Source: Paraphysomonas bandaiensis (Eukaryota > Protista > Chrysophyceae). Taken from it: a DNA stretch of 64,000 nucleotides. Below the pieces are notes generated by a model. The model was not told the origin of the DNA and did no database searches. It saw only the letters and a list, made by a program, of their open reading frames with translations. Where the stretch lies: contig CBFFRP010000358.1 in NCBI GenBank assembly GCA_965644295.1, positions 1-64,000 of the forward strand, read 5' to 3'. Both the position numbers and the translations under genes were made by a program. This document shows, piece by piece, positions 1,607-48,080 of the stretch. Positions within the stretch are counted from its first letter, which is position 1. Each line of letters opens with the position of its first letter.

Positions 1607-2326
1607 TTATTTATATCGAATCACTAATGTACAGGACCAGTGTTGACCATTTAAATCCACAATTCTACCTCTTTGATCAAGCAATCGTAAGTGTGTATTG
1701 ACTAAATTCTCAATTGAGTTAACCTGTGACATTAAATCTCCTTGATAGTAAATGACGCTATTTGGAGGAACCGAGTTTTGAATGCTGCAAAGGTAACATG
1801 CGTTCCGGGTATCGTTGCTTGATAAATTTTTTGTAATAAAATTGCTTGAGGTGATATGTAATGTGCGAATTGGGAATAGATTAATATTAGTATTGCTGGC
1901 AATAGTTTGATTAGTTGAGGTATAAGATTGTCCTTCGCTAAGCCCAAGCAGTTCAAAGCATGTAGATGTTGTGTATAATGTAAATTCATAATTTGCATGG
2001 GTGATGGTGTATGTATTTGTTGTGGATTGATAAGTAAAGATTAACCCTGTATTGTTTTGGAGAACTGTTTTTAAAGTGCTCACATTATAATTTCCTTGAG
2101 GAATGGTGAATTGTTGAATTCCACCACTGTTAATCTCATATACTAACAGCTGATTAATATTATCTACATTATAGAAACTTGTAGGTATTTCCGCGGATTT
2201 TACCCCTACTGTTAATTCAGTAATTTGCTTAGGTAGGTCTATCCTTGGTAGGTGAAAGATTACATCGCTCGTGTTTTGATTGATTTGTAAACTGGCATCT
2301 CGGGAGTTTAAAAATACTTGAATCAT
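1607..2326 (-). CDS. Putative minor capsid protein (penton, single jelly-roll)
   Basis: 239 aa, beta-strand-rich; N-terminal VFLNSRD, IPxSFYNV, IPQGNY and C-terminal LRLLDQRGRIVDLNGQHWS motifs typical of PLV/Polinton/NCLDV minor capsids; adjacent to the packaging ATPase. Confidence 0.7.
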   Translation of the reverse strand: MIQVFLNSRDASLQINQNTSDVIFHLPRIDLPKQITELTVGVKSAEIPTSFYNVDNINQLLVYEINSGGIQQFTIPQGNYNVSTLKTVLQNNTGLIFTYQSTTNTYTITHANYEFTLYTTSTCFELLGLSEGQSYTSTNQTIASNTNINLFPIRTLHITSSNFITKNLSSNDTRNACYLCSIQNSVPPNSVIYYQGDLMSQVNSIENLVNTHLRLLDQRGRIVDLNGQHWSCTLVIRYK

Positions 2327-2456
2327 TGCTTATTACTCTTGATAAAATGTTTTCGAGGATCATTTCGAATCCGGGGATATGGTCATATTCACACCCTCCG
2401 AGTCTTTTATTTATTTCATTTATATCGATAAGTAGATGGTAATCATAATGTTCCAT
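2229..2456 (-). CDS. Small hypothetical viral ORF
   Basis: ATG in AT-rich context fills the ATPase-penton gap, but the 3' part overlaps the penton ORF. Confidence 0.3.
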   Translation of the reverse strand: MEHYDYHLLIDINEINKRLGGCEYDHIPGFEMILENILSRVISNDSSIFKLPRCQFTNQSKHERCNLSPTKDRPT

Positions 2457-2469
2457 TTATAATATGGAA

Positions 2470-3195
2470 TTATTTTATTTGAAGCTGGTTAAAGTTTTTA
2501 TAAAATATGTTAGATACAATATCGATATCTAGATGATTATATGCTCGATCAAATACGTAATTATATAACTCAATTGCGTGATCTTTTTTCATACGGAGTA
2601 ACTCTTCGGATACCAGCTCAACTTCCTTGCGGTTTCTAAACTGGAATATTGTGACATTAGTTAACATTTTACGTAGTGTTAATTCAAATAGGTTGTAAGA
2701 CTGAAGAGTAAATATAGTTGATAAACCAATGTGTCTTGATTTTACGATGATTTTCTTTAATAGTGTAACTATTTGTTTATCTTTCAAATCATTAGCAAAG
2801 TCATCTATGATTAATAGAGAATTCTCAACAGGTAATTTATTTTCAATGCTATGTTTTTTAAATAAAGCAACTTCATCATATATATCTATTAATACCCCAT
2901 CTGTAAGCTCATGGTATTTTTTATCGTGGTTTTCAAAGGGGTGGTCCTTCACAGATAAATAACTTGATTCTGGGGAAATAAAGTAAATGTTGTCAAATTT
3001 TCCTCTGTAGTACTTGCTTGATCTAAATAATGAGAGTAGGAGGGAAGATTTACCTGAACCGGGTGCACCGATTAAAGCATATACAAACCCATTGCGGTTT
3101 GGAAGGTTAGGGTGGATATTTGGGATAAATATAGACATTGCTTCTTTCACAGGTTGGATATTAGGTAAATTACTTGGTTGCTCTGTTATGTGCAT
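2470..3195 (-). CDS. A32-like (FtsK-HerA) DNA packaging ATPase
   Basis: Walker A GAPGSGKS, Walker B LLIIDD, A32-specific SRH..STIFTLQ motif, C-terminal YNHLDID; 241 aa. Confidence 0.9.
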   Translation of the reverse strand: MHITEQPSNLPNIQPVKEAMSIFIPNIHPNLPNRNGFVYALIGAPGSGKSSLLLSLFRSSKYYRGKFDNIYFISPESSYLSVKDHPFENHDKKYHELTDGVLIDIYDEVALFKKHSIENKLPVENSLLIIDDFANDLKDKQIVTLLKKIIVKSRHIGLSTIFTLQSYNLFELTLRKMLTNVTIFQFRNRKEVELVSEELLRMKKDHAIELYNYVFDRAYNHLDIDIVSNIFYKNFNQLQIK

Positions 3196-3226
3196 TTTAT
3201 CTTACTTATCCTAATTATTTTTATTT

Positions 3227-4306
3227 TTAGGATTTATTTTTAGGAGGTCTACCTCTTCCTCTTTTTGGTGGTGGTGGTGGAGGTGGTGGTAAAAGTGGAG
3301 TTTTCGGGGATTTTGATTTTTCACTCTGTGGAGATTGTGTAATGTTTGAATCATCAAATTCCTCTATTGCTTTATGACTTTTTGGTTCTCTTTTTGTTTC
3401 TGTATTTTCTACCACTTTCTTTTTTGATTTAAATGCTGGTAATTCTTGATATTCCTCCTCGGTTATTGGAGCAGTACGCCTTGTTCGTTGTACCTTTGGT
3501 ACTGTTCTTAATCCCTTCGGTGCTTGATAATCTTCATCAGGTAATGATTCACTGCTATCTGTTGATAATGTATCAATCAACTCGCTGTGGCTATATTCTT
3601 TGCTTTGAGGAGTTTGTGGAGCTGCCGCTGTTAACGTAGAGTGTACATTTGATTGTTCTTCATTCATCTGCATGAACCGCTCACTTTCAGGTGTAAATGG
3701 TAATTCTCCTCCACCCATCTGCATAAAACGTTCGCGTTCTGGTGTGTATGGTGTTTTTAGACCTTCTTCTTGTGGTTTAATTGGTGATGGCTCTGTGAAC
3801 GTAACATGTGGTTCAGAGATATCAAATGCTTTTCGTCGTTTTGGTTTTGGTTTTGTTTCAGTCTGAACTAAACCTGTTACTAGATTTCCAGCTGTACTCA
3901 TTCGTGATTTCACTTTATTTTGATCAATCGCATTTGCAACGTGATAAGCAATAGCTTCGTTTCTCTCGTTCCAATCTCTTTTTGTTGGATTTGGTGTTTC
4001 CGATTGTGTGGAAGGCTTTGAGTTTTGTAAAAGTTCTAACTTTGCTTGAAGTAGTCCATCGTTCAACTTTTGTGTTTCTGCTTTGTTTCCTAATCCAAAC
4101 AATGGGTTTGTTGAAACATTACCCTGAAGTGGTTTGTTTGATTTCTCTTGAGGGATAAATAATCCTCTATCATCCTTTTTCTTTCTCCTGGCAGCTTTCT
4201 TTTTCCGACGTGCTCGTAGTTTATTTTGTATACGCTTTTTATCAATTCCGTATAATTTCACCAAATCATCGAGATCTAAATATATTTTATTTTTTGTTTT
4301 TCCCAT
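3227..4306 (-). CDS. Disordered basic viral protein with C-terminal AT-hook
   Basis: 359 aa; basic tract RARRKKKAARRKKK, duplicated TPExERFMQM motif, poly-Pro followed by PKRGRGRPPK. Confidence 0.75.
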   Translation of the reverse strand: MGKTKNKIYLDLDDLVKLYGIDKKRIQNKLRARRKKKAARRKKKDDRGLFIPQEKSNKPLQGNVSTNPLFGLGNKAETQKLNDGLLQAKLELLQNSKPSTQSETPNPTKRDWNERNEAIAYHVANAIDQNKVKSRMSTAGNLVTGLVQTETKPKPKRRKAFDISEPHVTFTEPSPIKPQEEGLKTPYTPERERFMQMGGGELPFTPESERFMQMNEEQSNVHSTLTAAAPQTPQSKEYSHSELIDTLSTDSSESLPDEDYQAPKGLRTVPKVQRTRRTAPITEEEYQELPAFKSKKKVVENTETKREPKSHKAIEEFDDSNITQSPQSEKSKSPKTPLLPPPPPPPPKRGRGRPPKNKS

Positions 4307-4317
4307 TCTTTATTTTA

Positions 4318-4836
4318 CTAACGAAAGAAATTATCGTATGTTTGAAATCGCTCTTTTCGAACTCTTGCTCTGTTATTCGATTGTCGCTTTGGTCCTCGTT
4401 TATAGTGTTGGTATTCTTCGTCATCGTAGTCATCTGCGTTATCCGATTCCTCATCAGTTTCACTGGATTCACTTTCCGATTCTTCCACAACAATCCGTGC
4501 TTTTGGTCTTTGTTTCTTTTTCCTGACAACTATATATTGTTCATCGGGGGTTTCTTCCTCGTCCGATGGAATTAACTTTGTAGTCACCATAGGTGTTTTA
4601 ACCTTTTTCTTTTTTAGTTGTTGATTTTCTTGTTGAATCAAGAGTTTTGAAGCCTCTATCATCTTTTCTTTTTTCTTTGCCTCAATAGATGCTATTCTCT
4701 TCTCACGAACTTTTTGAAATGCTTTCATCTGTGCTTCACTTCGGGGTTTTTTAGGTTTAGTGAGAGGAGTTTGAATTTCCGGGGTATTTTCTTCGATGGG
4801 AGCTTCGATTTGTTCGTTATCGTAAGTATCGGACAT
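4318..4836 (-). CDS. Charged hypothetical viral protein
   Basis: First ATG at 4836; KPKKPRSEAQMKAFQKVREKR basic helix, then acidic tracts. Confidence 0.7.
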   Translation of the reverse strand: MSDTYDNEQIEAPIEENTPEIQTPLTKPKKPRSEAQMKAFQKVREKRIASIEAKKKEKMIEASKLLIQQENQQLKKKKVKTPMVTTKLIPSDEEETPDEQYIVVRKKKQRPKARIVVEESESESSETDEESDNADDYDDEEYQHYKRGPKRQSNNRARVRKERFQTYDNFFR

Positions 4837-4912
4837 GTCTTTTAATAATACCAAGAAAATAATTTGGTTGGAAATTTAATAATCTAAAATTTTTATGTTG
4901 ATTATAATAAAC

Positions 4913-5446
4913 ATGCATCGTCAACCACCCGCACCACCAAAAGAATCAAAACCTGAAGTATACAATGAAATGAAAACACCGAGTATTATTTCAACCAGCG
5001 AAAACCCTTTTAAGTATCAACCTGTACCTGAAGTGAGTCTTTACGGTGCTAAACTTAAAGCTGATCATTTGTCCAAGAAAAACATACTGTTTACTAATGA
5101 AGCTAACCAATTTGTAAATGCTGTTCAGGATGCCCTTTCCAAATTTGATAAAAACTCGAATAGGTATAGCGAGGATATTTTGCTCTTTTGTATGTCTGCA
5201 TGTGAAAATGCAATCCTCGGTAAAAAACAGGGTGAATTAAAATTACAAATGGTAAAAGCTTGTGTGAAACCATTTTTCAATAATGATGAATTACTAATTG
5301 AGAAATGGGTCTCGCTTCTTATGCCTAAAATTCTTAATTATAAATTCTGGAATCGTAACTTACGTAAGATCGCTAGATTTTTTTTAAACTGTGTTTCGAT
5401 GAAGCAACAAGCACCATCACCCGACACGCAATCAAAGTTTCTGTAA
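4913..5446 (+). CDS. Hypothetical viral protein, divergent orientation
   Basis: Intronless ORF in the same AT-rich block; ATG at 4913 (alternative 4895). Confidence 0.65.
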   Translation: MHRQPPAPPKESKPEVYNEMKTPSIISTSENPFKYQPVPEVSLYGAKLKADHLSKKNILFTNEANQFVNAVQDALSKFDKNSNRYSEDILLFCMSACENAILGKKQGELKLQMVKACVKPFFNNDELLIEKWVSLLMPKILNYKFWNRNLRKIARFFLNCVSMKQQAPSPDTQSKFL

Positions 5447-5733
5447 AATATCTTCTCCCACTTTTAATAGCAATTGTTTAGCATGGGATTCTGTGTCACC
5501 CACACAAATTATGGTAGGGGATTCTGTGACACTCGTACGTCACGCGGATTCACACCCACGGATTATTCAATGTCGGTTAATTTCACAAGTGAGGGACCTT
5601 AGAAATCGACTTCGAAAAACGCTTTGCAGTTGTTGACACTTGCCAAAACCTTTGACTGAACCACCCTTCTTTCGGTATGTGCTCCCACCAATTTTCAGTA
5701 AGTGCTATCGCCTATAAATTGATGGAAGGGGTC

Positions 5734-5795
5734 TATATTGATATACGGGGAACTATGTGACACTAAAGTGTCACAGAGTCCCCGTATATCAATAT
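5734..5795. repeat. Near-perfect ~30-bp-arm palindrome/hairpin
   Basis: TATATTGATATACGGGGAACTATGTGACACT-AA-AGTGTCACAGAGTCCCCGTATATCAATATA; related GGGGATTCTGTGACACT at ~5517. Confidence 0.9.
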
Positions 5796-5899
5796 ATATC
5801 AAACGATGAGGAGTCCGTCGTACAGTGGAGCCCTTTAATCTCTCTACCACGGGATGGATAACTGGCAGTCTCCCTCAATAGTCTCTTGATGCTCCCATT

Positions 5900-6938
5900 A
5901 CGACCTGTACACTACAGTGGTTATGACCTGTACATGATTGTGACCTGTACACTACAGTGATTGTGGCCTCTATATTCTGCAAGGGTTATGACCTCTACAC
6001 TACAGTGGTTGTGACCTGGACACTACAGTGGTTGTGGCCTCTACACTGTAGTGGTTGTAACTATATTATCACTATTATAGCCTTATCTAAAAATTGACCG
6101 GGAAGAGGCCAATTGACCGTCTATGTATTGGGTTCACTTTTCTCTAAAACATAAGATTCTTTAAAATTTATGTTTTCTAATCTAACTTTTTTCATATCTA
6201 CAGTGTTCTTTTTCATAATTGAGAATCATTCAAATGTCATAATTAAAGCGCTTTTAGGATTGTATTACTTTTTATAAAATATACCATCTTTCAACAATGT
6301 ATCACAACTTTTTTTGATCCTTCATAACCGTCAAACAATTCAAAGTAAGATAGAGTGGAAAGGAAGAGTAATTACGATAGGAGGGCCCTTCTGGCCCAGG
6401 AAGAATGCCTGAGCGGCTCAGAGCGGCCCCCTGCCCTCCTGCTTTCTGTACACTGTAGTGGTTGTGGCCTCTACACTACAGTGGTTATGATATGTACACT
6501 ACAGTGGTTGTGGCCTCTACACTACAGTAGTTGTGGCCTCTACACTGCAGTCGTTATGATATGTACACTACAGTGGTTGTAGCCTTTACACTACAGTCGT
6601 TATGATATACACTACAGTGGTTGTGGCCTCTACACTACAGTGGTTATGATCTCTACACTACAGTGGTTGTAGCCTTTACACTGCAGTCGTTATGATATGT
6701 ACACTACAGTGATTGTGATATGTACACTACAGTGGTTATGATATGTACACTACAGTGGTTGTGGCCTCTACTCTGTAGTGGTTATGACCTCTACACTACA
6801 GTGGTTGTAGCCTTTACACTACAGTGGTTATGATATGTAGTGTTGTGGACTCTACACTGTAGTGACTGTGGCCTCTACACTGCAGTGGTTATGATATGTA
6901 CACTACAGTGGTTGTGGCCTCTACACTGCAGTGGTTGT
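5900..6938. repeat. ~23-bp minisatellite (TACACTACAGTGGTTGTGGCCTC) in two blocks
   Basis: Blocks at ~5900-6062 and ~6447-6938, separated by ~380 bp of unrelated sequence; variant units end in ATGATATG. Confidence 0.9.
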
Positions 6939-7219
6939 GAGTTTTGGAGTGCTAATCATAGTGTTATAGGTACCTCAGTACTACAACTGTCCTCGATTGT
7001 GGAGCAATACCCCCTACTATATTCTTTCTCTGTGACAACTGCGTTTCACTATAGCGCGAGAATAGGTTTCGATGGCAGCAGCATCGGTTCTCTGATGCCC
7101 CTGATGAGATATTTGTCCATCCTAAGATACGATGCTGAAATACATGATGCACATTGAATATTGCATGCATTCAATATTTGCTAGAGTATGCTCCCACGTT
7201 TGACTACGTGAATACTCAA

Positions 7220-7335
7220 TTCCACCTAGTCAACCTAGTCATTGTAAACTTCAAAATGTAATTATTTAATGACTAGGTTTTTACACCAATTTTGGTGTGA
7301 GTAGGAAATTCCACCAAATTGACTAGGTCGAAAAA
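7220..7335 (+). repeat. Dispersed GACTAGG-motif repeat, partial copy
   Basis: TAGGTTTTTACACCAATTTTGG..TAGGAAA.TCCACCAAATTGACTAGGT shared with 30760-30820. Confidence 0.7.
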
Positions 7336-9575
7336 TAAATCCAGCCAATATATAAAACGGCTGCGGAACAACTCATTCGATTAGGATTAGGGTTAAGCCT
7401 CTAATAATCTTTGGGGTGCCATTGATATATCTCCTACTACATTTGGTATAGTGTAAGCCAATCTTAAACTTAAACTTACCAGAACACTTAAACTAGCCGA
7501 CGAGGCTTTTGACAGATCTTTAAGTTACTTTAAGACTTTTAAAGTTGTCAAACATAAGTGTCCTCTTTTATATAGTCGCTGAGGATTTGTGTATGGCAAA
7601 AACAATAAAAAGTGCAGAACAACCCTCTCAACAAACCCCCAACGACCATAGAGAAGAGGATACTTATGTTTGACAGACTGCTTGTTAAAAAGGAACATTT
7701 TGTAGAAAATGCCTCTCCAGAAGCAAGGCATTGACTTATGCTAGTCGAAACGCTAATAAACTCGGCTAGACAGCTGGTGAATGGGGTATGGGAGCAATTG
7801 AGAAGATGTATCGTAGGCTACTTCTGCTCTGCCGTTTAATCAAAATTGATGCTACACAATATAACTACCGTGTGAAAACTTGTAGTATAACTCAGAGTAG
7901 GCAACTATTTTTTGTGCAATCATAATAATAATAATCATAATTCTAAGTTGCCATAACTTTAAGAATTAGGTGTTACTATGAATTGATTATTTGTTACCAT
8001 CCGGCACAAAGTTACTCAGTGCCAACATCAACATCATGTTTGTGACGTTGTTCCTCACGCTCCTCTCTTTAAATGCGGAATTCGGCTTCTTGTGGACTCC
8101 ATGTCCTGTGAAATTGGGAGTTTGCAATTGTACTCCAACGTCTGGTCCTCCCATCCGTCCAAAGTATAATTAATCACGTAATGTATGTTATTGCACATAC
8201 CCATGCCTAGAGGCAGCCTAGTCTCTCTTCTACAAGAGACAGCAGACTGATTCTGCGCCTACAAATTCCAGAGGCGACGTTTCATGCACTCAACATTTTC
8301 AGTTGCGGCACGCAAGTACTTCATGCGGCGGTAAAGTCTTGCTCGCTTCCGCTGCCTGCTACTATCTATTTATTATAATTAAGGTTACTCCGTCCGCGTT
8401 TACGACTAAATTATTAAAAGCAGCGTTATGGTTGAGGGCGTGAATGGAACTGATAACTGTTACTATATCTTCGCATCTGCTATTGAACAGCGGTAAGGAA
8501 TTCTTCCAGTATATATGCGTTTATATACAACACGATTAAGTTGCGTGTTTATGCCGTATCACACACTCCTGTCTTCGGCATAATATGTCTCCTGTAATAT
8601 GCGCTAGACTCTTCAATGTGGTGTTCACAGCAGCTGGTAGTCTGGATTGGAGTATAGAGTAGTAGCTCTGTAGCTGTATTGTTGGTAACCTCAAGGAGAA
8701 GACCGAAGGTGCATATGGCTCGGCAGGAGACGAGGGAGAAGCGGGATCAAAGAAGGGGAATAGGAAGTGTTCTATCCGGAAGATGCCATAGTAAGAGTGT
8801 CATCTGAGAGTGGTATCAGCTCTGTAGCATTCGGATGTATGTGTATGTTCGTGTGTTGTGATTCACACAACAATGATCACCTCATCCGATAAACCATACC
8901 TCTTGAGCACTCCTCGCTGTCATTAACAATGTCTTACTTAACATTGTATCTGTGGCGTGAAATGGTTCTGTGATGATTATATGTTGCTGCAATGTGTGTT
9001 ATCTCGTTGAGCGGTGTGAATACATTATAGATATTATTTTTATACTACAATGTGTGTCAAACGATAAGCTGAGTGAATACTCAGTATGCTCATGTTGCAC
9101 CGCTGATATACCTGACTTCTACTGACATTCTTGAGTTCTTAATGTGAACATACCGAATTTTTAACTCGAATGCAATACTCCGGTTGCTCTTTTGGTGCGC
9201 CGTGTCCCGGATGACCACCCAAGCATGAAAAATGTGTATCCAATATTGATAGTTTATAACTGCATTAGAACAGACAGAACGTACACTCAATAATAGATTG
9301 TGATAACTATATTGTCATTTTCACGAAATTTATTCTCTCAACTTCCCAATCAATTTCATACGATTGTAGTTAGTAGCGATCTTACAGACTCAGAAACTTA
9401 CCAGCTCACATCTATCCTGTAAAGATAGGTGGCCGTTCTTTTTTGCTGTTCACGCTGCAAACACTGTATTGGGATTGCAAAAACTGAAGTGCAAAAAACA
9501 TCAGCGCCCCTTCGTTGAAAAAGTCTGTAATAGATTTCTGTGGAATGCAAGTACGATTGAAGATGCTATACGTGC

Positions 9576-11932
9576 CAGGCTTGCGTAACAATTAATTCGT
9601 TTTCAATTTAAATTAATTGGTTTTAAAAGTGATAACTTCACTTAATTATTATTATTGGTAAATGTTGCCAATTAATTGGCTGGATAAATTACATATATAG
9701 AATCTTACGATTTATATCTACTAAACTTAGGTACAAACCCACTATATATATGTTAGCATATAGTAGTTTGGATGTATGTGCACAGTCACGTTAGCATTTA
9801 TTAATCGTAGTAAGAGTTTGTATACACTTTAACCTCAGCACGCAAAAGTAATAATATATATATATATCATGTCAAAGATCGTTGGCAAAAAACAAACTGA
9901 GCACCTCCATATAACGATCATCTAGATACATATAGCATAATATAGTGTGATAGAATATTCAACTGCTTTGAAATATTCAAGTGTAGTAGTGTAAATGACG
10001 TTATAAGTGTATCCGTTAGGTAACAGTATCAGAGGAAGAGAAGTATGTGTGTGTGACAGAATACCTTGTTATAATACAGAGGATCCGTGGTGCGTATGTA
10101 CAACAGTAACGGACTAGAATGATTGAATAGCCATACTTATCATTCTTATTTATTCATCAGGATGGCATCGAATGAACAAATTTGATGATTAAATTTGTCA
10201 GTACCCTGGGATGAACTTTTATCTGGGTGCAGACTCGGAAATTGTTCAAAATGCAGATTCGAGAGAGTATTAGTCAAATTTCAGCGCGGTAGGGAATAAT
10301 AACTGATAAATGATGTACCTGAACGAAGGTGAACTTGATGAAGAGAAATATAAGGAGGAGGAAGACGAAGGAGCCATTCGTTTACTTAAATACAACCGAA
10401 AGCGCCAAAAGGCACGCATCAAACCCCCAACACGATATCGTTGCATGAAGTATTTGTATTGTATATTGAAGAAGTGGTTGCACCTTGGTGCTTGCGCCGA
10501 CGCACAAGCAGCTTCTGTAGCGCTAAATAGTAGGATAATAGAATTTGTGCTGATTAGTTATGGGTAGAGGTCTAACTAGTAGATCTAGCATTCAACTAGC
10601 CACTGTATCGAAATCATACGCGATGGGCAGAAACAGGGCCAAGGGCAAACATGGAGACGAACTTACAACAGCAGCCAAATGCGCAGACTGTGACCACAAC
10701 CTGGACAACATGGCGCATATGCTCCTCCACTGTACCCTGAGATCGCCCAACTACGTGAACAAGCCTTCCACACTCAGCAAACCCAGCTCACAAAACTCCA
10801 TGAGCAACGACAACCCATCCCCTGGCTACACACCGCTCTACAAAGACTGGCGAGGGCTGCATGGGATCCCACCACACCCCAGGTTGAGAGATACTGGACC
10901 GGACAACTAACAGCCTCGCAACTGGCAAATGCTTTCGGACACAACATCTCCACCACGTTACATGACCACCAGTTCCATAAACTCGAGAAATCCGTCACCA
11001 AAGTCCAGCTCCCCCTCTACAATGGAGGAATAAACATGCTCAAAAACAGAGGATGTCGATTTCACAGTAACGATGCGACAACAATGACATCAACCTCGAC
11101 TCATGCCAGCTCACAACCACATCACACATACCCTACCACCAACCCGACGATCCTCCAGCTACTTAAAGCAACATCCACCCCCAGAGCCGTGCCCCACACG
11201 AGACCCCGCCCTCAACGCAGGCCTGCCAACCCGATCCGGAGGCAGACAACACTCATTTCCGACAGAACTGTAACTACAACTAGAACTCCCAAAACCCCCG
11301 CTGCCACACATCCACAGCATGGCGCATCACCCCCCACACCTCGACTCGCATGCGGAAATGGACCACCAGACACACTACCCAAAGGACGACCACCAGACTA
11401 AACTTAAAACAAGGGATGGTTGCACCAAGGTGCTTGCAGCAATGCACAAGCAGTCCCGAGATAACTGAGCATTACATATTCTGTGTCACAATTAGTCTAA
11501 GAAATAGATAGATAAATGCAACAAGTTTTCTCATGTAATAATCAGATCTAATTATAGCCACTGTATCGGAATGAGTTTCTAACGCCTATTGCTAAATAAA
11601 AAGACTTTCAATATTTGTATAGCACTACCAATGTTTGTGAGAGGTTGAGCAGAGCTAAGACTGTTACAACTACATTTTTGCAAGCGAATGACACCTAGAC
11701 ACTTGAAATGTTAATGTTTCTGCGTGAAAATGTGGATGTTTCTTTGGGATGAGATTATAGTTCATAAAGTTAATCTAAAATCTATCAATAGAATTAAAGG
11801 CAATTAATTGGCAATTATTGCCAATTAATTGCTTGCCAATAATTGGAGGCTAGATTAATAATTGCAATTATTATTGTTGGACACCTGTCACCAATTAATT
11901 GCCAATTAATTAATTATTTTTACGCAAGCCTG
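9576..11932 (+). mobile_element. Defective hAT DNA transposon
   Basis: TIRs CAGGCTTGCGTAA/TTACGCAAGCCTG; 8-bp TSD ATACGTGC/ACACGTGC (1 mismatch); AATTG-rich subterminal repeats; transposase C-terminal remnant ..KYLY|STTNVCERL..LEMLMFLREN. Confidence 0.85.
10460..11611 (+). mobile_element. 5'-truncated non-LTR/Penelope-like retroelement nested in the hAT transposase
   Basis: TATTTGTAT duplicated at 10451 and 11612, and removing the insert restores the hAT frame. Cx2Cx8Hx4C knuckle (CADC..HMLLHC); 3' end AATAAAAAGACTTTCA; copy of the 3' UTR repeat at 10471-10615. Confidence 0.75.
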
Positions 11933-38602: not shown

Positions 38603-41088
38603 TTACTTGGACGACGAATCCGACATAGGATTGACAAGATTCTTCTTGAGGGGTAGGTCTCTCTGAATATATCCCAAGATGGCCTCATAATCAGTCTTCA
38701 AGTACCGATCATCATCCATGCGTGGTGACATGCTCGCACAGTCAACAAACATTCTGCTCAGCTCCTTGGGAATCATAAAGTTCGGTTTGTTGCTGAACCG
38801 AGTGTGGAGGGCATGTGTAGTCATCAGCAACTCAATGGCTAACATTTTCTGTACATTTTCCACAACCTACCACGTAGTTTACGTTATAAACAGTTTCGTC
38901 GAAAGAGTAGAAATATATGGGAATTACAAATTTTATATATCGGCCATATACTCTACAATGAATATTGCTACAAACCTGAACAGCCTTTCTCGCCGAAAAG
39001 CCCCCCATACTGACATGATCCTCCTTCCCAGCTCCTGTGAGGATAAATACAAATATCAACCAAGCAAATGATTAGAAAAAGTGGTACGTAGGAGAAGCAG
39101 GAGCTAAAACTAAAAAAGCAGATGCCGACTCACGTCATACAAACAGCACCAATAAACATAACCGCTATGCTACCAACACAGCTATATACAGTTACTATAT
39201 ATTACCAGAATAAAGTAACATTCACTAATACATACCTGTATTGGCCGTCTCGGCGGAAGCTGGCATAGAGAGAGTCCTGTTCTCAGCATCCAATGCCGCC
39301 TGTGCAGAGTGCAATGTTGAGAGGCTTTGTGCAAGCGTATATAGTACACAATGTACAGGAAGTATCTATCCACACATGTCAGGTGCGCGCTACTTACAGC
39401 TGTCAGTTCCCAGCACATAAACCCCGAGTTGACCCCTGGATTGTTGACTACAAAGGCTGGTAGACCTATAAGTGCATACTAAGGATTGTTAGGTCATCTT
39501 TTAAAACAACGATACCTCTATTTCTATTGGGATCAATCATTAACATACTTCTTGCAACACTAGCTCGGCCCAGTTCTCCGACATACAGAGCCAAGGTATC
39601 CAGAGCCTTCGCTGGGTACTCTCCGTGGAAGTTGCCAGCTGATATGATGCAAGGTAGCTCCGTGTTAGTAATTGGGCACAGGGCAGGGTCAAATATAAGT
39701 GGGTTATCAGTACTGGAGTTCATTTCCGTTTCCAAAGTGTGACGAATAGAAACCAGAGACTCTAGGACTGTTCCATGGATTTGAGGAACACATCTTAACA
39801 TATGATTATCAGCAAAGCGTAACCTGAGAGTGCAAGACACTACCTCAGCGAATAGAAGTCTTGTACATCCTTATCGGTTGTCGTGTGAGAGTTGGGGGGT
39901 ACGAGGCCCCTCACAATTCTCGCCACAGTGGCGGATCCAACATGTGGGCGACATTCGTGGACTCTCGCATCAAAAGCATTCATGTGGCCATTCAGGGCCA
40001 CCAAAGTCAAGGCAGCGATTGGTTGGGCAACCTATACATTCAACACGGCAGTTCCACAGAGGAATAATACATTGAGATAGTTAGATAAACAAATATGAAA
40101 TGACAGTTATAGTACCTGCGCACATATGATTCCTGCCTCCAATGCTTGAGAGCCGACACCTGTGATGAATTGGGTGCCATTTACCAAAGAAAGTCCATCC
40201 TTGGCAACAAATTTGGCGGGTTCGAGGTTGTACTCTCGTAAAACGGAGGGTGCCGGCTCAAATGCATTAGTACGAGGATTATGAATTAGTCCCTCGCCAC
40301 TCAATCCAAGGGCGATGTGAGCAAGGGGAGCCAAATCACCTACATATAATGCTGTCACGACATACAGAACTAAGGATTTCCAACATTTACGTCTGGATGA
40401 CATATTACTACCAATATCTATATTCCTTTTTTACTTCATTATGCAGACATCATTCCAATACGTTCACAAATATACTACACCAATCACATCGCTCATTTAT
40501 ACCTGACGCCCCAACTGTGCCTTGACTCGGGACTTCAGGCGTGCATCCTGTGTTAAACAAATCCACGAGTTTTTTAAATGTATCCAAGCTTACGCCACTC
40601 TTTCCTCTAGCTAGAGTATTTATACGCAAAGCCATTATTCTGCGGACAACAGATGGATGCAAAGGCTCCCCAACCCCTGATGCATGGGAACGAATTAAGT
40701 TGTGCTGTAAATCGCACAACTGAGAGTAGGAAACATTGGTGTGTGACATCAGTCCAAACCCTGTATTGATACCATATGTCGGAACCTTTGATTCAACAAT
40801 TCGGTCTACTATATCTCTTGACTGCTGAAGTCTCTGAATGGTTTCAGGAGATATGGAGAGCGGAGTACCATCTCCTAACGCAATGAGTTTCTCTATAGTC
40901 ATGGAGTTCCCGTCTACATCAATAGAGGACGAAGATTTCATTTCGTTGGGAAAAAAATTCAAAACATTTGACTGAATCATGCTCGAAATCATATCAGAAT
41001 AAGAAGACTGAGTGGCTTTAGAGACACAAAAGCTGCGCCAGGCCTTTCCCATTACTCCCCCCACCCTCTTGCTGCATCGAAACGACAT
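38603..41088 (-). CDS. HAL: Histidine ammonia-lyase, 8 exons, N-terminal mitochondrial-presequence-like extension
   Basis: YGINTGFG; His-specific LQHNLIRSH; MIO triad GTVGASG|DLAPL; NGTQ; QDFYSLRCVPQ; TDNP; GNFHG; EDHVSMG. Exons 41088-40503, 40339-40116, 40031-39844, 39793-39516, 39465-39398, 39299-39236, 39034-38976, 38866-38603. Confidence 0.95.
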
Positions 41089-41713
41089 GCTATCAAAAAT
41101 CCTCAAAAGTGTATCAAAAGTGTATCAAAATTATTTAGACGCAAAAACGACAGCTAGGAATTCTTACAAAGCTTCCTGAATAGCAGTGTAACAGTAATGA
41201 TTAATCGGTGTAGGAATAGTGACTTCAGGTGGCTGATTTTGTTGGATGTGGACACTTTAACACCTAAAAGATCCCAACAAATATCAGCCTCATATGTAAA
41301 ATACAGTGTGATACGAACTTGGAATACACAGTATGCACCATAAATCTAGAATAAATATGTTCCCACTCCTTGTCTTTGTCTATGCAGCTATGCAGGGTTA
41401 AATACATGACGTATACCACACCTTATACAGTGTAGTTGGATAGATACACACATCTCAGCTACCATATACACATATACACGTATACATGACTGAAGGAGAA
41501 CGTCATATCCAGACCAAGAATATACAGCACAGTACTGTACAGTATACTGCTCACATCTTCTACGATCGGAGTGGGTGTTCACTTTAATCTGCTCTCCAGA
41601 ATTAAGTTCCAAATCGTGATTAGCATAATTACCACACGGGATAACTGCTCTCTCCTACCCACCCTAAGAACTCTGTTTAGTGGCCACCCATTCAATTATT
41701 CATAGGTTGCAAC
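41089..41713. promoter_or_regulatory. Putative bidirectional promoter shared by HAL and HutI-HutU
   Basis: 625 bp between divergent ATGs of consecutive pathway genes; contains tandem CAAAAGTGTAT near HAL. Confidence 0.55.
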
Positions 41714-44700
41714 ATGCTGCGAAATATTCGTGTGAGCTCTGTGAAAAAGCTGCGCTGCATGCCCCTCTCCTCTATGAGGGTCGTTAATATAGGGGCTGGT
41801 GGGTACTCTTCACCTCATATTACCTCGCATCTTGTTGTTAATTTATGTAACAGTGGTAACGCCCTCAAGAGATGGCTCTACTATTGAAACTCATAAAAAC
41901 AAGGATCTTCTTATCGTTGACGGTAAGATGGCCGGCATCACTCCCTCACAGTCTACTTATTCGGAGCCTGTCTTCGACGCCAGTGGATGTCTTGCAACAC
42001 CTGGCTTTGTAGACGCCCATACTCATTTGTTTCCACCGAACGACAGAGCAGAAGAATTTGTCATTAGGTATTCCGATTACATTACACTTGTGTTGACATC
42101 ATGTGCATTGTTTTGCACGTAACATTGTGTTAAATAAATGCATCAGCATAATATTTCTTTTATTGTGAAATATAGGTCCGTGAAGTCTTATTTAGAGATA
42201 GCCAAAGAGGGTGGTGGCATTCTGTCTACTGTGAGAAGCTTCAGAAACGCGACTGTTGAACAAATTGTTGAAGCCAACAGACCCTTGATGGAACAGTTTT
42301 TTGCCCAAGGTACGCCACGCGTATGTTCACAAATTAGTTATAATAGAGGAACATGATAGTTATATCGTTAGTGTTATTGTGTAACTTACAACATCCCTGC
42401 TCAGTTGTTGTATATAAATTAATATCATGCAGTGAGTAGTAATAGTCAGAATAATATGATATCTCATTGTAAATATGGCATATATGTTCTTAAGCTAACC
42501 ATGACTGTTTATGTAGGGACAACAACAGTTGAGGTTAAGTCTGGGTATGGTCTTACCACAGCTGATGAGGTGAAGTCTCTTAAAGCTATTCAAATCCTTC
42601 AGAAAGAGTTTTCTGATAAACTCACAATAGTTCCAACCTTTATGGGTGCTCATGCTGTGCCGCCTGAATACAAGGGGAGAACAGACGAATACGTTGATTT
42701 AGTATGCAATGAAATGATTCCCGAAGTGGCGAAATTAAAACTCGCAACCTATTGTGATGTATTCTGCGAAGAAGGATATTTCAATGCCACACAAACCACC
42801 AAAGTAATATATCCTCGCTGTGTACGCTGTTGGGGTGTTTCGTCTGCATTGTGTGGAAATTTTAGCATGAATATGATTCTGCGTCATGTGGTATTCAAGA
42901 TTGCCGCAAAGAATATGCAGCATTCGTCGTTTCTTTCTCTAAATGAATTATATAACAGATTCTGGAAGCAGCTAAGGCTCATGGGATGTTGACCAGACTG
43001 CACGCTGATGAGTTCAAAGACAGTAAAGGAGCTGCTACGGCTGCGCGCATGGGATCTCACTCCGCTGATCATCTAATGGCAGTAACGGATGAAGGTACCT
43101 TATTGTGCAGTGGTTTATGTTCTCATGCAGGGCATTGGGTATGTGTGTGCTCGAGTATAGTGTACTTTGAGAAGTGATGTTGACACAAATAACAAGTTAT
43201 GTGTTGTAGGCATCGCTGCAATGAGAGATGCTGGAGTGATTCCAATCGTCTTACCTGGTGCAACTGTTTTCTTGGGAAAGGTGTTCTCCTTATTCGCTAG
43301 TTTATGGTGCTGATATTGCTTGCCATTCCTGCAGGGACATGGGTATGCTCCTATGCGGCGTATACTGGATGCTGGTGGAAGGCTAGCTATGGCTACTGAC
43401 CATAACCCTGGTTCTTCCGTACATCAGAGTATGGCGCAAATGATGCAGCTGTGTATTGCAAACGGTGGTATAACACTCTCTGAGGTATATATGTAGATAT
43501 ATATATCCTGATGTAGCTATTGGGTTGACGTCGAGCGATGTGTCTTGATAGGCTTTGATGGGAGCTACATACAATCCAGCCCTATCCCTAAACCTTAAAG
43601 ACAAAGTTGGAAGCCTGCAGGTAACTAAACATACGGTTTTAGTTGACTTTCAGTGTGTGCATGGCCTGTACAAAATGATTGTGACATTGGAGTCCTCATT
43701 GGTGATGTTGTTCACATTACGCAGGAGGGCGCGCAGGCTGACATCATTCTCTGGAACTTTGAAAGCGCATCTCAGATTCCGTATTATGGCGGCGAGAGCA
43801 GACACCGAATAGATACCGTATTTAAACATGGAAAAGCTTTCCGCAACCCTCTTCAGAACCTTTCTTGTTTACATTCGACCTCGTTTCACTCATTAAAGCC
43901 GTTACGCTCTAATGCGAGACAGTATTCTACCACCGCCAGTCGCAACCAAGAAATAGTTCTAGGAACTGTGCGAGATGTTGTATCGACAATGACTCACGAT
44001 GTCAAACTGAATGCGTCCGGGCAAATCACGGAGTGTCCGACTGAGCCAGTGAAGCTCGATCCTAGCGTTCCTCACGCACCGAAGCGATTGACACGATTAA
44101 ATGCAGAGGAGAGAGAGCTGGCCATTACGAATGCATTAAAATATTTTTCTAAGGACCTTCACTCTAAAGTGAAGCCTATATGTGAATATGAGTTGGACAC
44201 TTATGGCCATGTATATTTCTATAACCTACTGCCCTCCAAACATATATGGGCGATTCCTTTTGAAGACATTCCAGCCCAGTCACTAGAGGCCAAAGCCATG
44301 ATACATATGATTCTGAATAATTTGAACCCTGATGTCGCCCAATTTCCTCAGGTTTGCCCTGTATGCTGTATTTCCCATGATATTCTATGCTTTATTGTGT
44401 ATGACGGAATAGCGGAGCTATTGTCGTCGATATATTTTCTGCATTGTGTGATAAAGTTTGTAAACAGAGTAGATGGTCATATGTATTGCTTATTATACTT
44501 TTATCCATTTTGAGTGTTATTGCATATGTACTGAATTTTGTATTTCAGGAGCTTATTACATACGGTGGTAATGGCGCGGTTTTTTCGAACTGGGCCCAAT
44601 TTCATATCACCATACGCATGCTGAGCAAAATGAAGGCCACCCAGACCCTTTGTATGAATAGTGGCCATCCTGCAGGCCTCTTTCCTAAGTTCCCAGAAGA

Positions 44701-46860
44701 CCAAACTCCTTGGGCTGTGATCAGCAACGGCAACATGATTCCCCATTACTCCACTCCAGAGCAACTAGATAGACTGTATGCACTGGGTAAGTCGTGGGTA
44801 CTTTCAGCGTCTGATTCTCTAAGATGCGGTATCTATCTGTGACACGTATTGAAAACAGTATGTGCACATATTATTCAGTGTCAAACTTATTTTGGAACGT
44901 ATATTTATATAAGCTTTGTGTTGTCGTTTCTTTGAGTAACAGTAATATTTTTTTACTAGGGGTATCGATGTATGGACAGATGACAGCAGGTAATCGATAC
45001 TTCTCTATGATGTTCATGTTACCTGTATAGTGTGGTACCTTTATTATGTACATTTGGACGATGTTGTATTGTACTTATTCAAAGATAATCTCATTGCTGC
45101 GCTATTGTTTCAGGGTCATGGATGTATATTGGACCCCAAGGGATCGTTCATGGCACCACTCTCACTGTTGCTCAAGCTGTGGCAATGCAATCGAAGTCAA
45201 AGTCTGGGGGATGCAAAGGAAAAGTTTTCGTTACTTCTGGATTGGGGGGCATGTCAGGTGATGGCGCACTATATTCGGACCGTTATTTTAGTATCGTGAT
45301 ATCTATATACGTCCTGCATATGTTATATTCTAGAATATACAGAACAATGCTTAGATCGACTTTGTCACCGATGTATATTAGGGGCTCAGCCGAAAGCCGC
45401 CACTATAAACGGTGCTGTTTGTCTGATAGCTGAAGTCGATGAGTCCGCTTTGCGTAAGCGCCACGAGCAAGGGTGGCTGAACGAGTACTACACAGACCTT
45501 AATGATGTCCTTTCACGTGCCAAGGAGGCCCAGAATAATGGCGAATCTGTCAGTATTGGTTACCTAGGCAATGTCGTTGAGTTGTGGGAAAAGCTGGCGG
45601 AGATACCTAAACAAGATCGCTGTGAAGTGGCTATCGGGAGTGATCAGACGAGTCTTCACAACCCATATAATGGTGGATACTATCCAGTGGGACTCAGCTT
45701 CGAACAAAGTAACGAGATGATGACCTCAAAACCCGAGGAGTTCAAAAAGGCTGTTCAAGCTAGTCTGCACCGCCATTTGGCTGCTATCAACAAGCTCAGA
45801 CAGAGTGATGATTTGCTCTTTTTTGACTATGGTAATGCGTTTTTACTCGAGTGTCACAGAGCTGGCTGCCAAGTAGATCCGGAAATTCCTTCTTATGTTG
45901 AATGTATTATGGGTCCTGAGTTCTTTGATTACGGTTTTGGGCCGTATAGATGGGTATGCACTAGCGGGGATATGGATGATTTGAAAGCAACTGATGCGAT
46001 TGCGGCGAATGTGTTACAATCTCAGCTAGATGATCCCATTAATAGCAAAGTCCAACCACAGCTGAAGGCAAATTTAGATTGGATTCAGGCAGCAATGCAG
46101 AACAAACTAGTAGTTGGCAGCAAGGCGCGTATTTTATACTCCGATCTGGAAGGGAGAATTGAGTGCGCGGTGAGGATGAATGACGCTGTCGGAAAGGGCG
46201 TTCTAAAGGCTCCAGTTGTTATTGGAAGGTATTTCGCTGCAGCCCGTGATGCTTATCCAACGTTGGCAGTTTTTCAGTAGCATTGTAGAACAATTGTTGT
46301 TGTTTTCGCGCATTTTGTGTGATGCAGTTATGTATTTCTAAATTGTATATGTATAGCGTATCGTATCTGAGCCTCATATTGATTTAGGGATCATCATGAT
46401 GTCAGCGGTACCGATAGCCCTTGGCGGGAAACTGCCAATATTAAAGATGGAAGTAATCTTACTGCAGACATGTCTATCCAAAACGTTATTGGAGACGCGA
46501 TGAGGTAACTGAAATTTATAGTTTTATACGTATGCAATACGTATATCGAAGCTGTTGTGTAACTATGATATGCCGCTGCCTTGCTTACAATTGCGCTGAT
46601 GTCGATCTTGTAGAGGTGCCACATGGGTGTCTCTTCACAATGGCGGGGGTACAGGATGGGGTGTTGCGTCTAATGGAGGTTTCGGACTTGTGCTAGATGG
46701 ATCTGCTCGCGCTGAGCGCAACTGCAGGAATATGATATTCTTCGATGTGGCCAATGGGCTTACTCGGCGGGCTCGTGCTGGTAACCCTAATGCGCTACAC
46801 ACTATCAAGAAGCTTGCTGACAAGTACCCTGACTTTGAGCCATTTGTTCCTGTGATTTAG
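41714..46860 (+). CDS. Imidazolonepropionase-urocanate hydratase fusion (HutI/AMDHD1 + HutU/UROC1)
   Basis: HutI motifs: PGFVDAHTH, GGGILSTV, EVKSGYGL, DVFCEEGYF, HADE, SADHL, TDHNPGSS. Exon 43725-44351 runs without a stop from ADIILW..VFKHGK into urocanase DPSVPHAPKR. Later exons carry ELITYGG, YGQMTAGSWMYIGPQG, GLGGMSGAQP, DQTSLHN, FDYGN, GRDHHDVSG and HNGGG. All introns are GT-AG and phase-compatible. Confidence 0.92.
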
Positions 46861-48080
46861 TGGGATGCGCGTGTATGATGCATGAAGTGTCATCGCGTGT
46901 AGCATTCGCTCTGGGTAATGACCGGTAGTGTGGTAGTTTGGTGAGCAAAACACTGGTTGCCTGAATGAATTGAAATTTTAAATAATATCTTTTCTGCTAT
47001 TCCCATTAATTTTCTATTCATATAGTTTTTTTGCATTGTGGTGGATATGGAAATAAAGCCATGTAGTAGAGCCACTTTGAAGAAGACAGAATCTTAACCT
47101 AACCAACTCTCCCAAAGCAAATACATGTGTATTTTAAAACCTACTAATAGAGACATGATATATGTCCATCTTTTATACATGTTTAGCTATTTTATAATAC
47201 ACACACGAGAGGCCGACGAAGGAATAAGAACATTAAATTTTCATTTTTTCTTCTTCCGTTGTGCCCTCTATAAACAGGGATTAAATCAACTATATACTAA
47301 ATAATTATGAAAATTGAATTTTCTTTTCTTCTTCTTTTTGCTATCACCGTGGGATCGTGTGTATGTAATAAAGTACTTAAAGTGAATTCGCTTTAATTTA
47401 GTGAATTAAGATAGAAGGGCCCATAATTCCTTTGAGTACGACAACAAAATCTCTTTGAATGTGAAACCCACTCACACATTGACAGTCATGTCAGTATACA
47501 CACTGAGTTCAAGGGCTACGCGTAACGTATCGGTTTGTGTATACTTTAATCAGAAATGGTTGAGTTCACATGGACTGGGAGTATCATGAGGATGAGTGCT
47601 GTGTGTATCAATCAACAGCATTAAATTACCATCACTAGATGGAGATGCTGCAACAGTGACATCCAGAGCATTGCTGCTGTGATTGCAGTTGTGTGTTAAG
47701 GATGGGGAGTCCACCTCAGGTCCACCTTATATGCATCTATAGATAGATACAGCACCCATGTGCCTGTATTCGATGTATATCTGTTGCTACATACTACTGC
47801 AGCAGTATATGAAGAATACACCCCCATATACACGTGAAGGTTGTGGTGCTGATGCTATAACTTATACGTGGTATACAGCAGTAGCACAGTATTATGGGTG
47901 TCCGTACACGGTATACGTAATTATATGCCCTACACACTCACTATACACTATACACTGCTGTACACTGTACAGTACGGCGGTGCAGGGCTGCAGTGTTGGT
48001 ACGTGCAAGTGAAGTTGTTACTGCTACATGTCACACACCATAATAACAATACACTAAGAGCTGTACAGTAAATATCTGCC

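What the first reader, a model, noticed from the sequence alone, without database searches (positions are those of the whole stretch)
43725..44351. In-frame imidazolonepropionase-urocanase fusion within a single exon
Seen: the HutI C-terminus (IDTVFKHGK) and the urocanase N-terminus (DPSVPHAPKR) lie in one uninterrupted exon, so the fusion does not depend on how exons were joined. Known: the intermediate 4-imidazolone-5-propionate is chemically unstable. Inference: fusion could allow channelling or fixed stoichiometry. Domain order is the reverse of pathway order.
Basis: partly seen in the sequence, partly recalled or inferred. Interest (0 to 1): 0.8.

Follow-up and report, generated by a model that had tools for sequence, protein, structure and literature searches.

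The report
Real HutI-urocanase fusion gene in Paraphysomonas
A marine chrysophyte flagellate makes two consecutive histidine-breakdown enzymes (imidazolonepropionase and urocanase) as one 1131-residue protein; the fusion is real and expressed, is already in public databases though I found no paper on it, and has arisen more than once in protists.

Summary
Window 43725-44351 is exon 9 of a 15-exon gene (CDS 41714-46860, + strand). It carries the HutI C-terminus, a 45-residue linker and the urocanase N-terminus in one open frame. Spliced RNA contigs from four studies cross the exon with no joint, indel or stop. Two of them (3.6 and 3.3 kb) run from the 5'UTR nearly or fully to the 3'UTR.

The 1131-aa product matches a 'complete' MMETSP Paraphysomonas transcript ORF (P0262) except for C430S. 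It passes the NCBIfam equivalog cut-offs for both hutI and hutU, keeps the catalytic residues, and is the only HutI/HutU locus in the 62.6-Mb genome. An AlphaFold2 model gives two well-folded enzymes joined by a disordered tether (residues 428-457).

The fusion is not unique. HutI-HutU occurs in other chrysophytes and in unnamed metagenomic lineages. The reverse order, HutU-HutI, occurs in Triparma (NCBI). HAL-HutI-HutU triple fusions also exist. Domain trees indicate two to three independent fusions. A histidine ammonia-lyase gene lies head-to-head with the fusion in five of the loci examined.

Best reading: a tethered bifunctional enzyme that fixes stoichiometry and proximity around the labile intermediate. 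A channel is not shown. A mitochondrial polyprotein cleaved in the basic linker remains a minority rival. Interest is moderate: a new member of a known kind.

The parts
41596..46961 (+). Transcribed span of the HutI-HutU gene: 15 exons and 14 GT..AG introns of 54-207 nt
   Evidence: Spliced contigs X5 (3587 nt, 41596-46933) and X6 (3302 nt) cover it. X1 and X9 contigs run from exon 7 to the 3' end (X1 reaches 46961). Intron ends were checked.
41714..46860 (+). Coding sequence of the 1131-aa fusion protein (ATG 41714, TAG 46858-46860)
   Evidence: Exons defined by the RNA joints give one 1131-codon ORF. It is identical to P0262 (MMETSP transcript ORF, 'type:complete') except C430S.
41714..43835 (+). 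Imidazolonepropionase (HutI) part, residues 1-419 (exons 1-8 and the start of exon 9). Residues 1-20 are a basic, acid-free N-terminal extension.
   Evidence: TIGR01224 hutI scores 369 bits against a cut-off of 298. Amidohydro_1 covers residues 76-419. Metal and catalytic residues align with 2BB0. Residues 1-17 have pLDDT below 50.
43725..44351 (+). Exon 9, the junction exon (residues 383-591): HutI C-terminus, linker and urocanase N-terminus
   Evidence: No joint or indel lies inside it in 4 runs.
43836..43970 (+). Linker, residues 420-464. The first part is conserved among chrysophyte homologues. The core (428-457, window 43860-43949) is disordered, basic, rich in Ser/Thr and acid-free, and holds an R-x-Y|S-T motif.
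   Evidence: pLDDT is below 50 for residues 428-457.
43971..46857 (+). Urocanate hydratase (HutU) part, residues 465-1131, including the native eukaryote-type N-terminal helix and the PHAPKR motif
   Evidence: TIGR01228 hutU scores 427 bits against a cut-off of 375. Urocanase_N, Rossmann and C domains lie at 558-1115. PDB 6UEK (T. cruzi) aligns to residues 486-1109 at E 1.6e-216. N-termini of unfused eukaryotic urocanases align to about 465-495.
38603..41088 (-). Histidine ammonia-lyase (HAL) gene, head-to-head with the fusion gene. Ends are approximate: the low end is taken from the scan's own note, and my matches reach 38666.
   Evidence: Lyase_aromatic hit at E 5.8e-47 on the first exon. 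Exon-wise tblastn matches run from 40953 down to 38666.
41089..41595 (.). About 0.5 kb between the HAL start and the fusion transcript's 5' end; a presumed bidirectional promoter region
   Evidence: Inferred from the positions of the two genes. The same divergent arrangement is seen in four other loci.

Best explanation
This is one nuclear gene of the chrysophyte Paraphysomonas. It is transcribed and spliced into one mRNA and encodes a bifunctional enzyme. The N-terminal part is imidazolonepropionase (HutI, step 3 of histidine catabolism). The C-terminal part is a complete eukaryote-type urocanate hydratase (HutU, step 2). A linker of about 45 residues joins them, and its central 30 or so residues are disordered. 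Urocanate made by the divergently transcribed HAL gene would be hydrated by the C-terminal domain to 4-imidazolone-5-propionate, which the tethered N-terminal domain would hydrolyse to N-formimino-glutamate. The fusion guarantees 1:1 synthesis, co-regulation and co-localisation of the enzyme that makes a chemically labile intermediate and the enzyme that consumes it. Shown here: the gene structure, the single ORF, the spliced RNA contigs, the intactness of both domains, single-copy status, and conservation with recurrence of the fusion. Inferred: the kinetic benefit (proximity or stoichiometry) and the absence of processing.
For: The open frame and exon limits are. Spliced contigs from 4 studies cross the junction, and two span 5'UTR to 3'UTR. 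P0262 is an independent 'complete' ORF. Both NCBIfam equivalog cut-offs are passed, while the thiourocanate hydratase cut-offs are not reached. The HutI ligands H84/H86 and the residues that align with H249, E252, H272 and D324 of 2BB0 are kept. The urocanase NAD motif GLGGMSGAQ and the conserved Cys in RWVCTSGD are kept. It is the only HutI/HutU locus in the 62.6-Mb assembly. The AF2 model has mean pLDDT 85.7, with only residues 1-17 and 428-457 disordered. More than 20 clusters of HutI+HutU fusions turned up elsewhere, many of them single uninterrupted ORFs on DNA or mRNA-sized contigs. Three fusion groups are separated by unfused or otherwise fused relatives in both the urocanase tree and the HutI tree, so selection has joined this pair repeatedly. 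The internal Met472 is not conserved in homologues, which argues against a conserved internal start.
Against: All RNA evidence consists of assembled contigs, which cannot prove a single molecule or exclude additional shorter transcripts. In two runs the 5' HutI contigs have much lower depth than the 3' contig, which breaks in exon 7. No protein-level evidence exists. pTM 0.61 gives no defined inter-domain geometry, so channelling is not demonstrated. The linker and the N-terminus look like mitochondrial presequences, which leaves post-import cleavage possible.
Confidence: 0.78

Rival explanations
1. Mitochondrial polyprotein. The fusion is imported through its basic N-terminal extension and then cut by the matrix processing peptidase in the presequence-like linker (around R-Q-Y|S-T, residues 449-453). 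This would release separate HutI and HutU, as in fungal Arg5,6. The fusion would then serve co-expression and co-import, not a tethered enzyme.
For: Residues 1-34 and 413-457 are among the longest acid-free stretches of the protein, and each holds 7 Lys/Arg. Both are predicted disordered. R-x-[FY]-S-[ST] recurs in the otherwise variable linkers of the chrysophyte-clade homologues P0157 and P0003, with a near-match in the P0002 fragment. HAL also has a basic N-terminal extension. The scan's note s1-455991 raised the same idea.
Against: No targeting predictor was available, so the evidence rests on composition and motif only. The close relatives P0004, P0155 and P0156 lack any N-terminal extension. 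Linkers of the AT-rich clade and of P0167 are short and acidic. The feature is therefore not general to the fusion family. By rough estimate, the motif would occur by chance in about 15% of linkers of this composition. Other acid-free stretches lie inside folded domains.
Confidence: 0.15
2. The two enzymes are made separately, from an internal promoter or internal initiation at Met472 or from transcripts ending in the linker. On this reading the continuous ORF is an assembly or annotation by-product of two adjacent in-frame genes.
For: Contigs cannot show transcript ends (tool caveat). Met472 lies 26 residues before the PHAPKR motif, which is similar to the N-terminal length of unfused urocanases. 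The 3' part has higher contig depth than the 5' part in X1 and X9.
Against: There is no stop codon for HutI anywhere in the linker, in the genome or in 4 RNA data sets. The high-depth contigs start inside HutI exon 7, not in the linker. Met472 is not conserved. The same fusion is an uninterrupted ORF in many distant organisms. No unfused copy exists in the genome.
Confidence: 0.04
3. The fusion is real but selectively near-neutral. It would be a by-product of a long-standing adjacent gene pair in a compact cluster that lost its intergenic region, with no kinetic benefit.
For: The Hut genes are clustered in these lineages, which makes read-through fusion mechanically easy. The tether is long and flexible with no predicted interface.
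Against: The same pair was fused at least twice, and probably three times, in both orders, and was further joined to HAL. In two lineages HAL is fused to a HutG-like arginase-fold domain. Repeated retention suggests an advantage.
Confidence: 0.2

Closest known systems
Stand-alone imidazolonepropionase HutI (e.g. Bacillus subtilis, PDB 2BB0; human AMDHD1)
   Same: It has the same amidohydrolase fold family. The TIGR01224 equivalog cut-off is passed. The H-x-H, His, Asp metal ligands and the Arg/Tyr/His/Glu active-site residues are conserved.
   Different: Here it is the N-terminal 419 residues of a 1131-residue protein. It has no stop codon of its own, and it carries a 20-residue basic N-terminal extension.
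Eukaryote-type urocanate hydratase (Trypanosoma cruzi, PDB 6UEK; vertebrate UROC1)
   Same: This is the best structural relative (E 1.6e-216 over residues 486-1109). It has the same three Pfam domains and the same N-terminal helix with the PHAPKR motif found in unfused eukaryotic urocanases.
   Different: In T. cruzi the four pathway enzymes are described as separate proteins (PMC12203737). Here urocanase has no start of its own and is preceded by HutI and a linker.
HutU-HutI fusion proteins of Triparma spp. (NCBI GMH92195.1, GMH86160.1, GMH74151.1, GMI09954.1; UniProt 'Probable imidazolonepropionase')
   Same: The same two enzymes are in one polypeptide of about 1090 residues in another ochrophyte. 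HAL lies head-to-head with it. The junction lies inside one open frame in genomic DNA.
   Different: The domain order is opposite (pathway order). Both domains fall in different clades from the window's, so this is an independent fusion. An FTCD gene sits in the same cluster.
Consecutive-enzyme fusion proteins in general (Rosetta-stone fusions), and MPP-cleaved polyproteins such as fungal Arg5,6
   Same: Two consecutive pathway steps are encoded as one ORF. The linker is flexible. In the chrysophyte clade the linker resembles a presequence.
   Different: I found no published description of this pair being fused. Cleavage is untested.

Membership tests
Imidazolonepropionase (HutI, EC 3.5.2.7, TIGR01224) | Scores above the curated equivalog cut-off over the full model | tested here: met
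   369.0 bits against a cut-off of 298.15; residues 43-419 match model positions 2-376 of 377
Imidazolonepropionase (HutI, EC 3.5.2.7, TIGR01224) | Metal ligands and catalytic residues of B. subtilis HutI (H80, H82, H249, D324; R89, Y102, Y152, H185, E252, H272). The residue list is from my own knowledge of the 2BB0 paper. | tested here: met
   All align to identical residues in the phmmer alignment to 2BB0
Imidazolonepropionase (HutI, EC 3.5.2.7, TIGR01224) | Hydrolysis of 4-imidazolone-5-propionate to N-formimino-L-glutamate | not testable with these tools
   An enzyme assay is needed
Urocanate hydratase (HutU, EC 4.2.1.49, TIGR01228) | Scores above the curated equivalog cut-off, and does not qualify as one of the related thiourocanate hydratases | tested here: met
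   427.1 bits against a cut-off of 375. The thiourocanate and S-methyl-thiourocanate hydratase models score 300 and 332 bits against cut-offs of 930 and 880
Urocanate hydratase (HutU, EC 4.2.1.49, TIGR01228) | Urocanase_N, Rossmann-like and C domains in order, with the glycine-rich NAD+ motif and the conserved Cys | tested here: met
   The domains lie at 558-684, 687-902 and 909-1115. GLGGMSGAQ and the Cys in RWVCTSGD fall on invariant or nearly invariant columns
Urocanate hydratase (HutU, EC 4.2.1.49, TIGR01228) | Hydration of urocanate with tightly bound NAD+ | not testable with these tools
   An enzyme assay is needed
Natural bifunctional fusion enzyme (single polypeptide) | One uninterrupted ORF on one mature mRNA | tested here: met
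   Spliced contigs of 3.6 and 3.3 kb span all exons, and the ORF is 1131 codons. Caveat: these are contigs, not single molecules
Natural bifunctional fusion enzyme (single polypeptide) | The full-length protein persists in the cell (is not processed) | not testable with these tools
   No proteomic data were accessible
MPP-processed mitochondrial polyprotein (Arg5,6 type) | An N-terminal presequence plus an internal presequence-like segment with an R-2/R-3 cleavage motif | tested here: inconclusive
   Basic acid-free segments at 1-34 and 413-457, and an RQY|ST motif. These are absent from several relatives, and no predictor was available
MPP-processed mitochondrial polyprotein (Arg5,6 type) | Demonstrated cleavage into two mature enzymes | not testable with these tools
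   Needs a western blot, proteomics or an in-vitro MPP assay

The most novel reading that the evidence does not exclude
In chrysophytes and other protists, histidine catabolism is encoded by a conserved divergent gene pair: HAL, in some lineages fused to a HutG-like domain, lies head-to-head with a HutI/HutU fusion. Its enzymes have been fused repeatedly and independently. In the chrysophyte clade the basic linker is a working internal mitochondrial presequence, so the pathway would be imported as a polyprotein and run in mitochondria. That would be a location and a processing mode not described for this pathway.
Probability: 0.15. Interest if true: 0.65.

Novelty: new member of a known kind. 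Interest (0 to 1): 0.42.

Why it matters
Recurrent, independent fusion of the same two consecutive enzymes, in both orders and sometimes with HAL added, is natural-experiment evidence that coupling urocanase to imidazolonepropionase is advantageous. The most plausible reason is that 4-imidazolone-5-propionate is labile (my own knowledge; no supporting paper was retrieved). This gives a directly testable system, fused versus split enzyme, for proximity effects on an unstable intermediate. It also documents a conserved metabolic gene cluster with a shared divergent promoter in protists. For annotation, these proteins are currently named after only one of their two activities ('urocanate hydratase' or 'probable imidazolonepropionase').

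Tried and rejected
1. Assembly or annotation artefact. Rejected: RNA contigs from four studies match the genome across the junction without indel or stop, and an independent MMETSP ORF is identical but for one polymorphism.

2. An unfused paralogue elsewhere in the genome. None was found with P0262 as query.

3. Bacterial origin or contamination of the fusion clade. One related fusion (78% identical to P0167) sits in a MAG labelled Gammaproteobacteria. However, 40 relatives of that MAG carry only ordinary unfused hutU and hutI at about 38% identity, and the contig's neighbours are immunoglobulin-domain proteins. I treat it as probably mis-binned. This stays unresolved, as does the source of L001 and L014.

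4. FTCD as the fourth step in this genome. No match was found. The strongest arginase-family loci are agmatinase-like. Weak HutG-like matches exist at two other loci.

5. Literature. Six searches and one supplement search found no description of the fusion. One search was too loose and gave nothing useful on the instability of the intermediate.

6. SNP-based selection test. With only 8 coding differences (4 synonymous, 4 not), it is uninformative.

I joined the exons only inside a script to check the reading frame and sent no joined model to any search tool. All full-length searches used the database protein P0262. Window-side comparisons were made exon by exon (tblastn of database proteins against the window).

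Full report
**Observation.** The window is eukaryotic DNA (about 40% GC) with short GT..AG introns. The frame through 43725-44351 is open. It reads the end of an imidazolonepropionase (..IDTVFKHGK), then a stretch with no family match, then the start of a urocanase (..DPSVPHAPKR..). Pfam finds urocanase N, Rossmann and C domains in the downstream open frames and amidohydrolase matches upstream. It also finds an aromatic amino-acid lyase (HAL) on the opposite strand just upstream.

**RNA evidence.** A k-mer search found the stretch in poly(A) marine metatranscriptomes and in runs of three coded organisms. I laid four runs from four studies on 41400-47100.
- The contigs show 14 joints, all GT..AG, so they are spliced RNA.
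- X5 (3587 nt) and X6 (3302 nt) run from 41596/41597 through the exons towards the 3' end; X5 reaches 46933 in the 3'UTR. X1 and X9 contigs run from exon 7 to the 3' end.
- No joint, insertion or deletion falls inside it. The only differences there are 43866 T>A (Cys430Ser, in the linker) and two synonymous changes.
- Limits: these are contigs, so they cannot show transcript ends or prove a single molecule. In X1 and X9 the 5' part is assembled separately at lower depth, with the break in exon 7, not in the linker.

**Gene model.** I joined the RNA-defined exons inside a script, only to test the frame. This gives a 3615-nt mRNA with one ORF of 1131 codons, from ATG 41714 to TAG 46858-46860. 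A cluster look-up returned P0262, a 1131-aa 'type:complete' ORF from an MMETSP transcript clustered with a Paraphysomonas protein. P0262 is identical to my model except Cys430Ser, which is the same polymorphism seen in the reads. All full-length analyses use P0262. The genome is therefore that of a Paraphysomonas (colourless chrysophyte, Stramenopiles). This fits the scan's note of mastigoneme genes nearby.

**Are both halves functional enzymes?**
- P0262 passes the NCBIfam equivalog cut-offs for hutU (427 against 375 bits) and hutI (369 against 298). It falls far below the cut-offs of the thiourocanate hydratases.
- Against B. subtilis HutI (2BB0), the H-x-H, His249 and Asp324 metal ligands and Arg89, Tyr102, Tyr152, His185, Glu252 and His272 are all conserved. 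The residue roles are from my own knowledge.
- The urocanase part is most like the T. cruzi enzyme 6UEK (E 1.6e-216, residues 486-1109). It keeps the GLGGMSGAQ NAD motif and the conserved Cys.
- Unfused eukaryotic urocanases begin with a short helix and a PHAPKR-type motif that align to residues of about 465-500. The urocanase is therefore complete, and the true linker is residues 420-464.
- The genome holds no other HutI or HutU locus.

**Structure.** AlphaFold2 with a 33-row alignment gives mean pLDDT 85.7 and pTM 0.61. Both enzymes fold confidently. Only residues 1-17 and 428-457 fall below pLDDT 50. The model is two rigid bodies on a flexible tether of about 30 residues. It shows no defined interface, so it gives no support for a physical channel.

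**Distribution.**
- A profile-free search with exon 9 found fragments spanning the junction and two long fusion proteins, which Pfam confirmed.
- A word search with the Chrysophyte-H1 fusion P0004 accepts only candidates of 564 aa or more, so it excludes plain HutI. It returned about 20 clusters that carry both enzymes.
- Pfam shows three architectures:
  - HutI-HutU: Paraphysomonas, Chrysophyte H1, P0155-157, an AT-rich intronless clade P0159-166, P0167, P0170 and P0008.
  - HutU-HutI: four Triparma taxa in NCBI/UniProt, plus P0168 and P0173.
  - HAL-HutI-HutU of about 1780 aa: P0171 and P0172.
- Several of these are uninterrupted ORFs on genomic or mRNA-sized contigs. In Triparma the junction lies in one open frame.
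- A maximum-likelihood tree of the urocanase domain and a FastTree of the HutI domain both recover the same three fusion groups with full support.
- Both trees separate these groups by unfused or otherwise fused relatives. In the urocanase tree, the order-B and P0170/triple groups sit with animal-like unfused urocanases (98/94), apart from the main HutI-HutU clade (100/100).
- This indicates at least two, and probably three, independent fusions. Sampling is small and the trees are unrooted, so fission cannot be excluded formally.

**Gene neighbourhood.** HAL lies head-to-head with the fusion in five settings:
- the window;
- the chrysophyte-like contig of P0157;
- L002, where HAL is itself fused to an arginase-fold, HutG-like domain;
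- L014 and L016, which carry the same HAL-arginase fusion;
- Triparma verrucosa, where an FTCD gene is adjacent too.

This is a conserved eukaryotic Hut cluster with a shared divergent promoter region.

L016 is filed under a Gammaproteobacteria MAG. Forty relatives of that MAG have only ordinary unfused genes, and its neighbours are Ig-domain proteins. I regard it as probably mis-binned.

**Linker and targeting.** In the chrysophyte clade the linker is 31-69 residues long, basic, Ser/Thr-rich and poor in acidic residues.
- Paraphysomonas has R-Q-Y|S-T. P0157 and P0003 have R-x-F-S-[ST], and P0155 has R-A-L-A.
- The AT-rich clade and P0167 have short acidic linkers.
- In P0262, residues 1-34 and 413-457 are among the longest acid-free stretches of the protein, each with 7 Lys/Arg.
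- HAL also starts with a basic extension.

This fits the scan's idea of a mitochondrial polyprotein cut in the linker (s1-455991). However, P0004, P0155 and P0156 have no N-terminal extension, no predictor was available, and the motif is short. I give this rival 0.15.

**Mechanism.** The best-supported reading is a persistent bifunctional enzyme. The C-terminal urocanase makes 4-imidazolone-5-propionate, and the tethered N-terminal HutI hydrolyses it. The fusion fixes stoichiometry, co-expression and proximity. The lability of the intermediate is from my own knowledge; I retrieved no paper for it (one search failed). The repeated independent fusions are the main indirect argument for a selective benefit. 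A flexible tether argues for proximity or co-assembly rather than a tunnel. The domain order has no evident meaning, because both orders exist.

**Novelty.** The sequence object is not new. The same ORF is in MMETSP-derived sets, Triparma fusions are in NCBI/UniProt, and JGI calls many of them 'urocanate hydratase'. In the searchable library I found no paper that mentions the fusion, including a systematic survey of metabolic gene fusions and the Parmales genome paper. T. cruzi, the best-studied protist for this pathway, is described as having four separate enzymes (PMC12203737). I class it as a new (undescribed) member of a known kind, fusions of consecutive enzymes. Recurrence and clustering are the points of interest.

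Noticed in passing
window 38603-41088 (- strand): A histidine ammonia-lyase gene lies head-to-head with the fusion gene, about 0.5 kb apart. Its first exon encodes a basic, acid-free N-terminal extension of about 60 residues ahead of the lyase domain. In this genome HAL is not fused to an arginase-fold domain.
   Followed up: partly
L002:497-3325 (-), L014:2188-5079 (-), L016:2734-5700 (-): In three metagenomic or MAG loci, the HAL gene divergent from the HutI-HutU fusion is itself fused to a C-terminal arginase-fold domain whose best NCBIfam match is hutG formimidoylglutamase. Two divergent genes would then encode all four pathway steps.
   Followed up: partly
L003:405-5729 (P0171) and P0172: Triple fusion proteins HAL-HutI-HutU of 1774-1788 residues, on 60% GC contigs of unknown organism. 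P0171 is one uninterrupted ORF on an mRNA-sized contig.
   Followed up: partly
L015 (Triparma verrucosa BRXX01000125.1): 1576-9801: A complete Hut cluster in Triparma: FTCD (+), HAL (-) and HutU-HutI (+). The fusion is in the opposite domain order to the window's.
   Followed up: partly
L016 / G001:C85 (JAYPBG010000085.1): A contig carrying HAL-arginase and HutI-HutU fusions is binned in a Gammaproteobacteria MAG. Its neighbours are immunoglobulin I-set domain proteins, and 40 relatives of the MAG have only unfused hutU/hutI at about 38% identity. It is probably a mis-binned contig.
   Followed up: partly
G000:C69:166384-166734 (-) and G000:C120:21607-21957 (-) (L022, L023): Two loci have open frames of about 440 aa. 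Each combines a U2AF-like RRM match with a weak match to the first half of hutG formimidoylglutamase (36-40 bits). They are possible candidates for the fourth pathway step, or merged neighbouring genes. No FTCD was found in the genome.
   Followed up: partly
window 41886-43484 versus 43335-46961: In the poly(A) metatranscriptome X1 and in X9, the 5' (HutI) part is assembled as separate low-depth contigs (2.5-6). The 3' contig, which starts inside exon 7, has depth 22-44. This could be 3' bias or an additional shorter transcript. It cannot be resolved from contigs.
   Followed up: no
window 42853-42988: One X9 contig covers part of intron 4 with two differences from the window, so it is unspliced RNA or DNA carry-over in that run.
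   Followed up: no
L004/L005:8001-11153 (P0173): A HutU-HutI fusion sits as a single ORF in a 27% GC genome seen on at least 24 contigs in many samples. The neighbours are mostly short unannotated ORFs plus a TnpB/Cas12f-like fragment. The organism is unknown.
   Followed up: no
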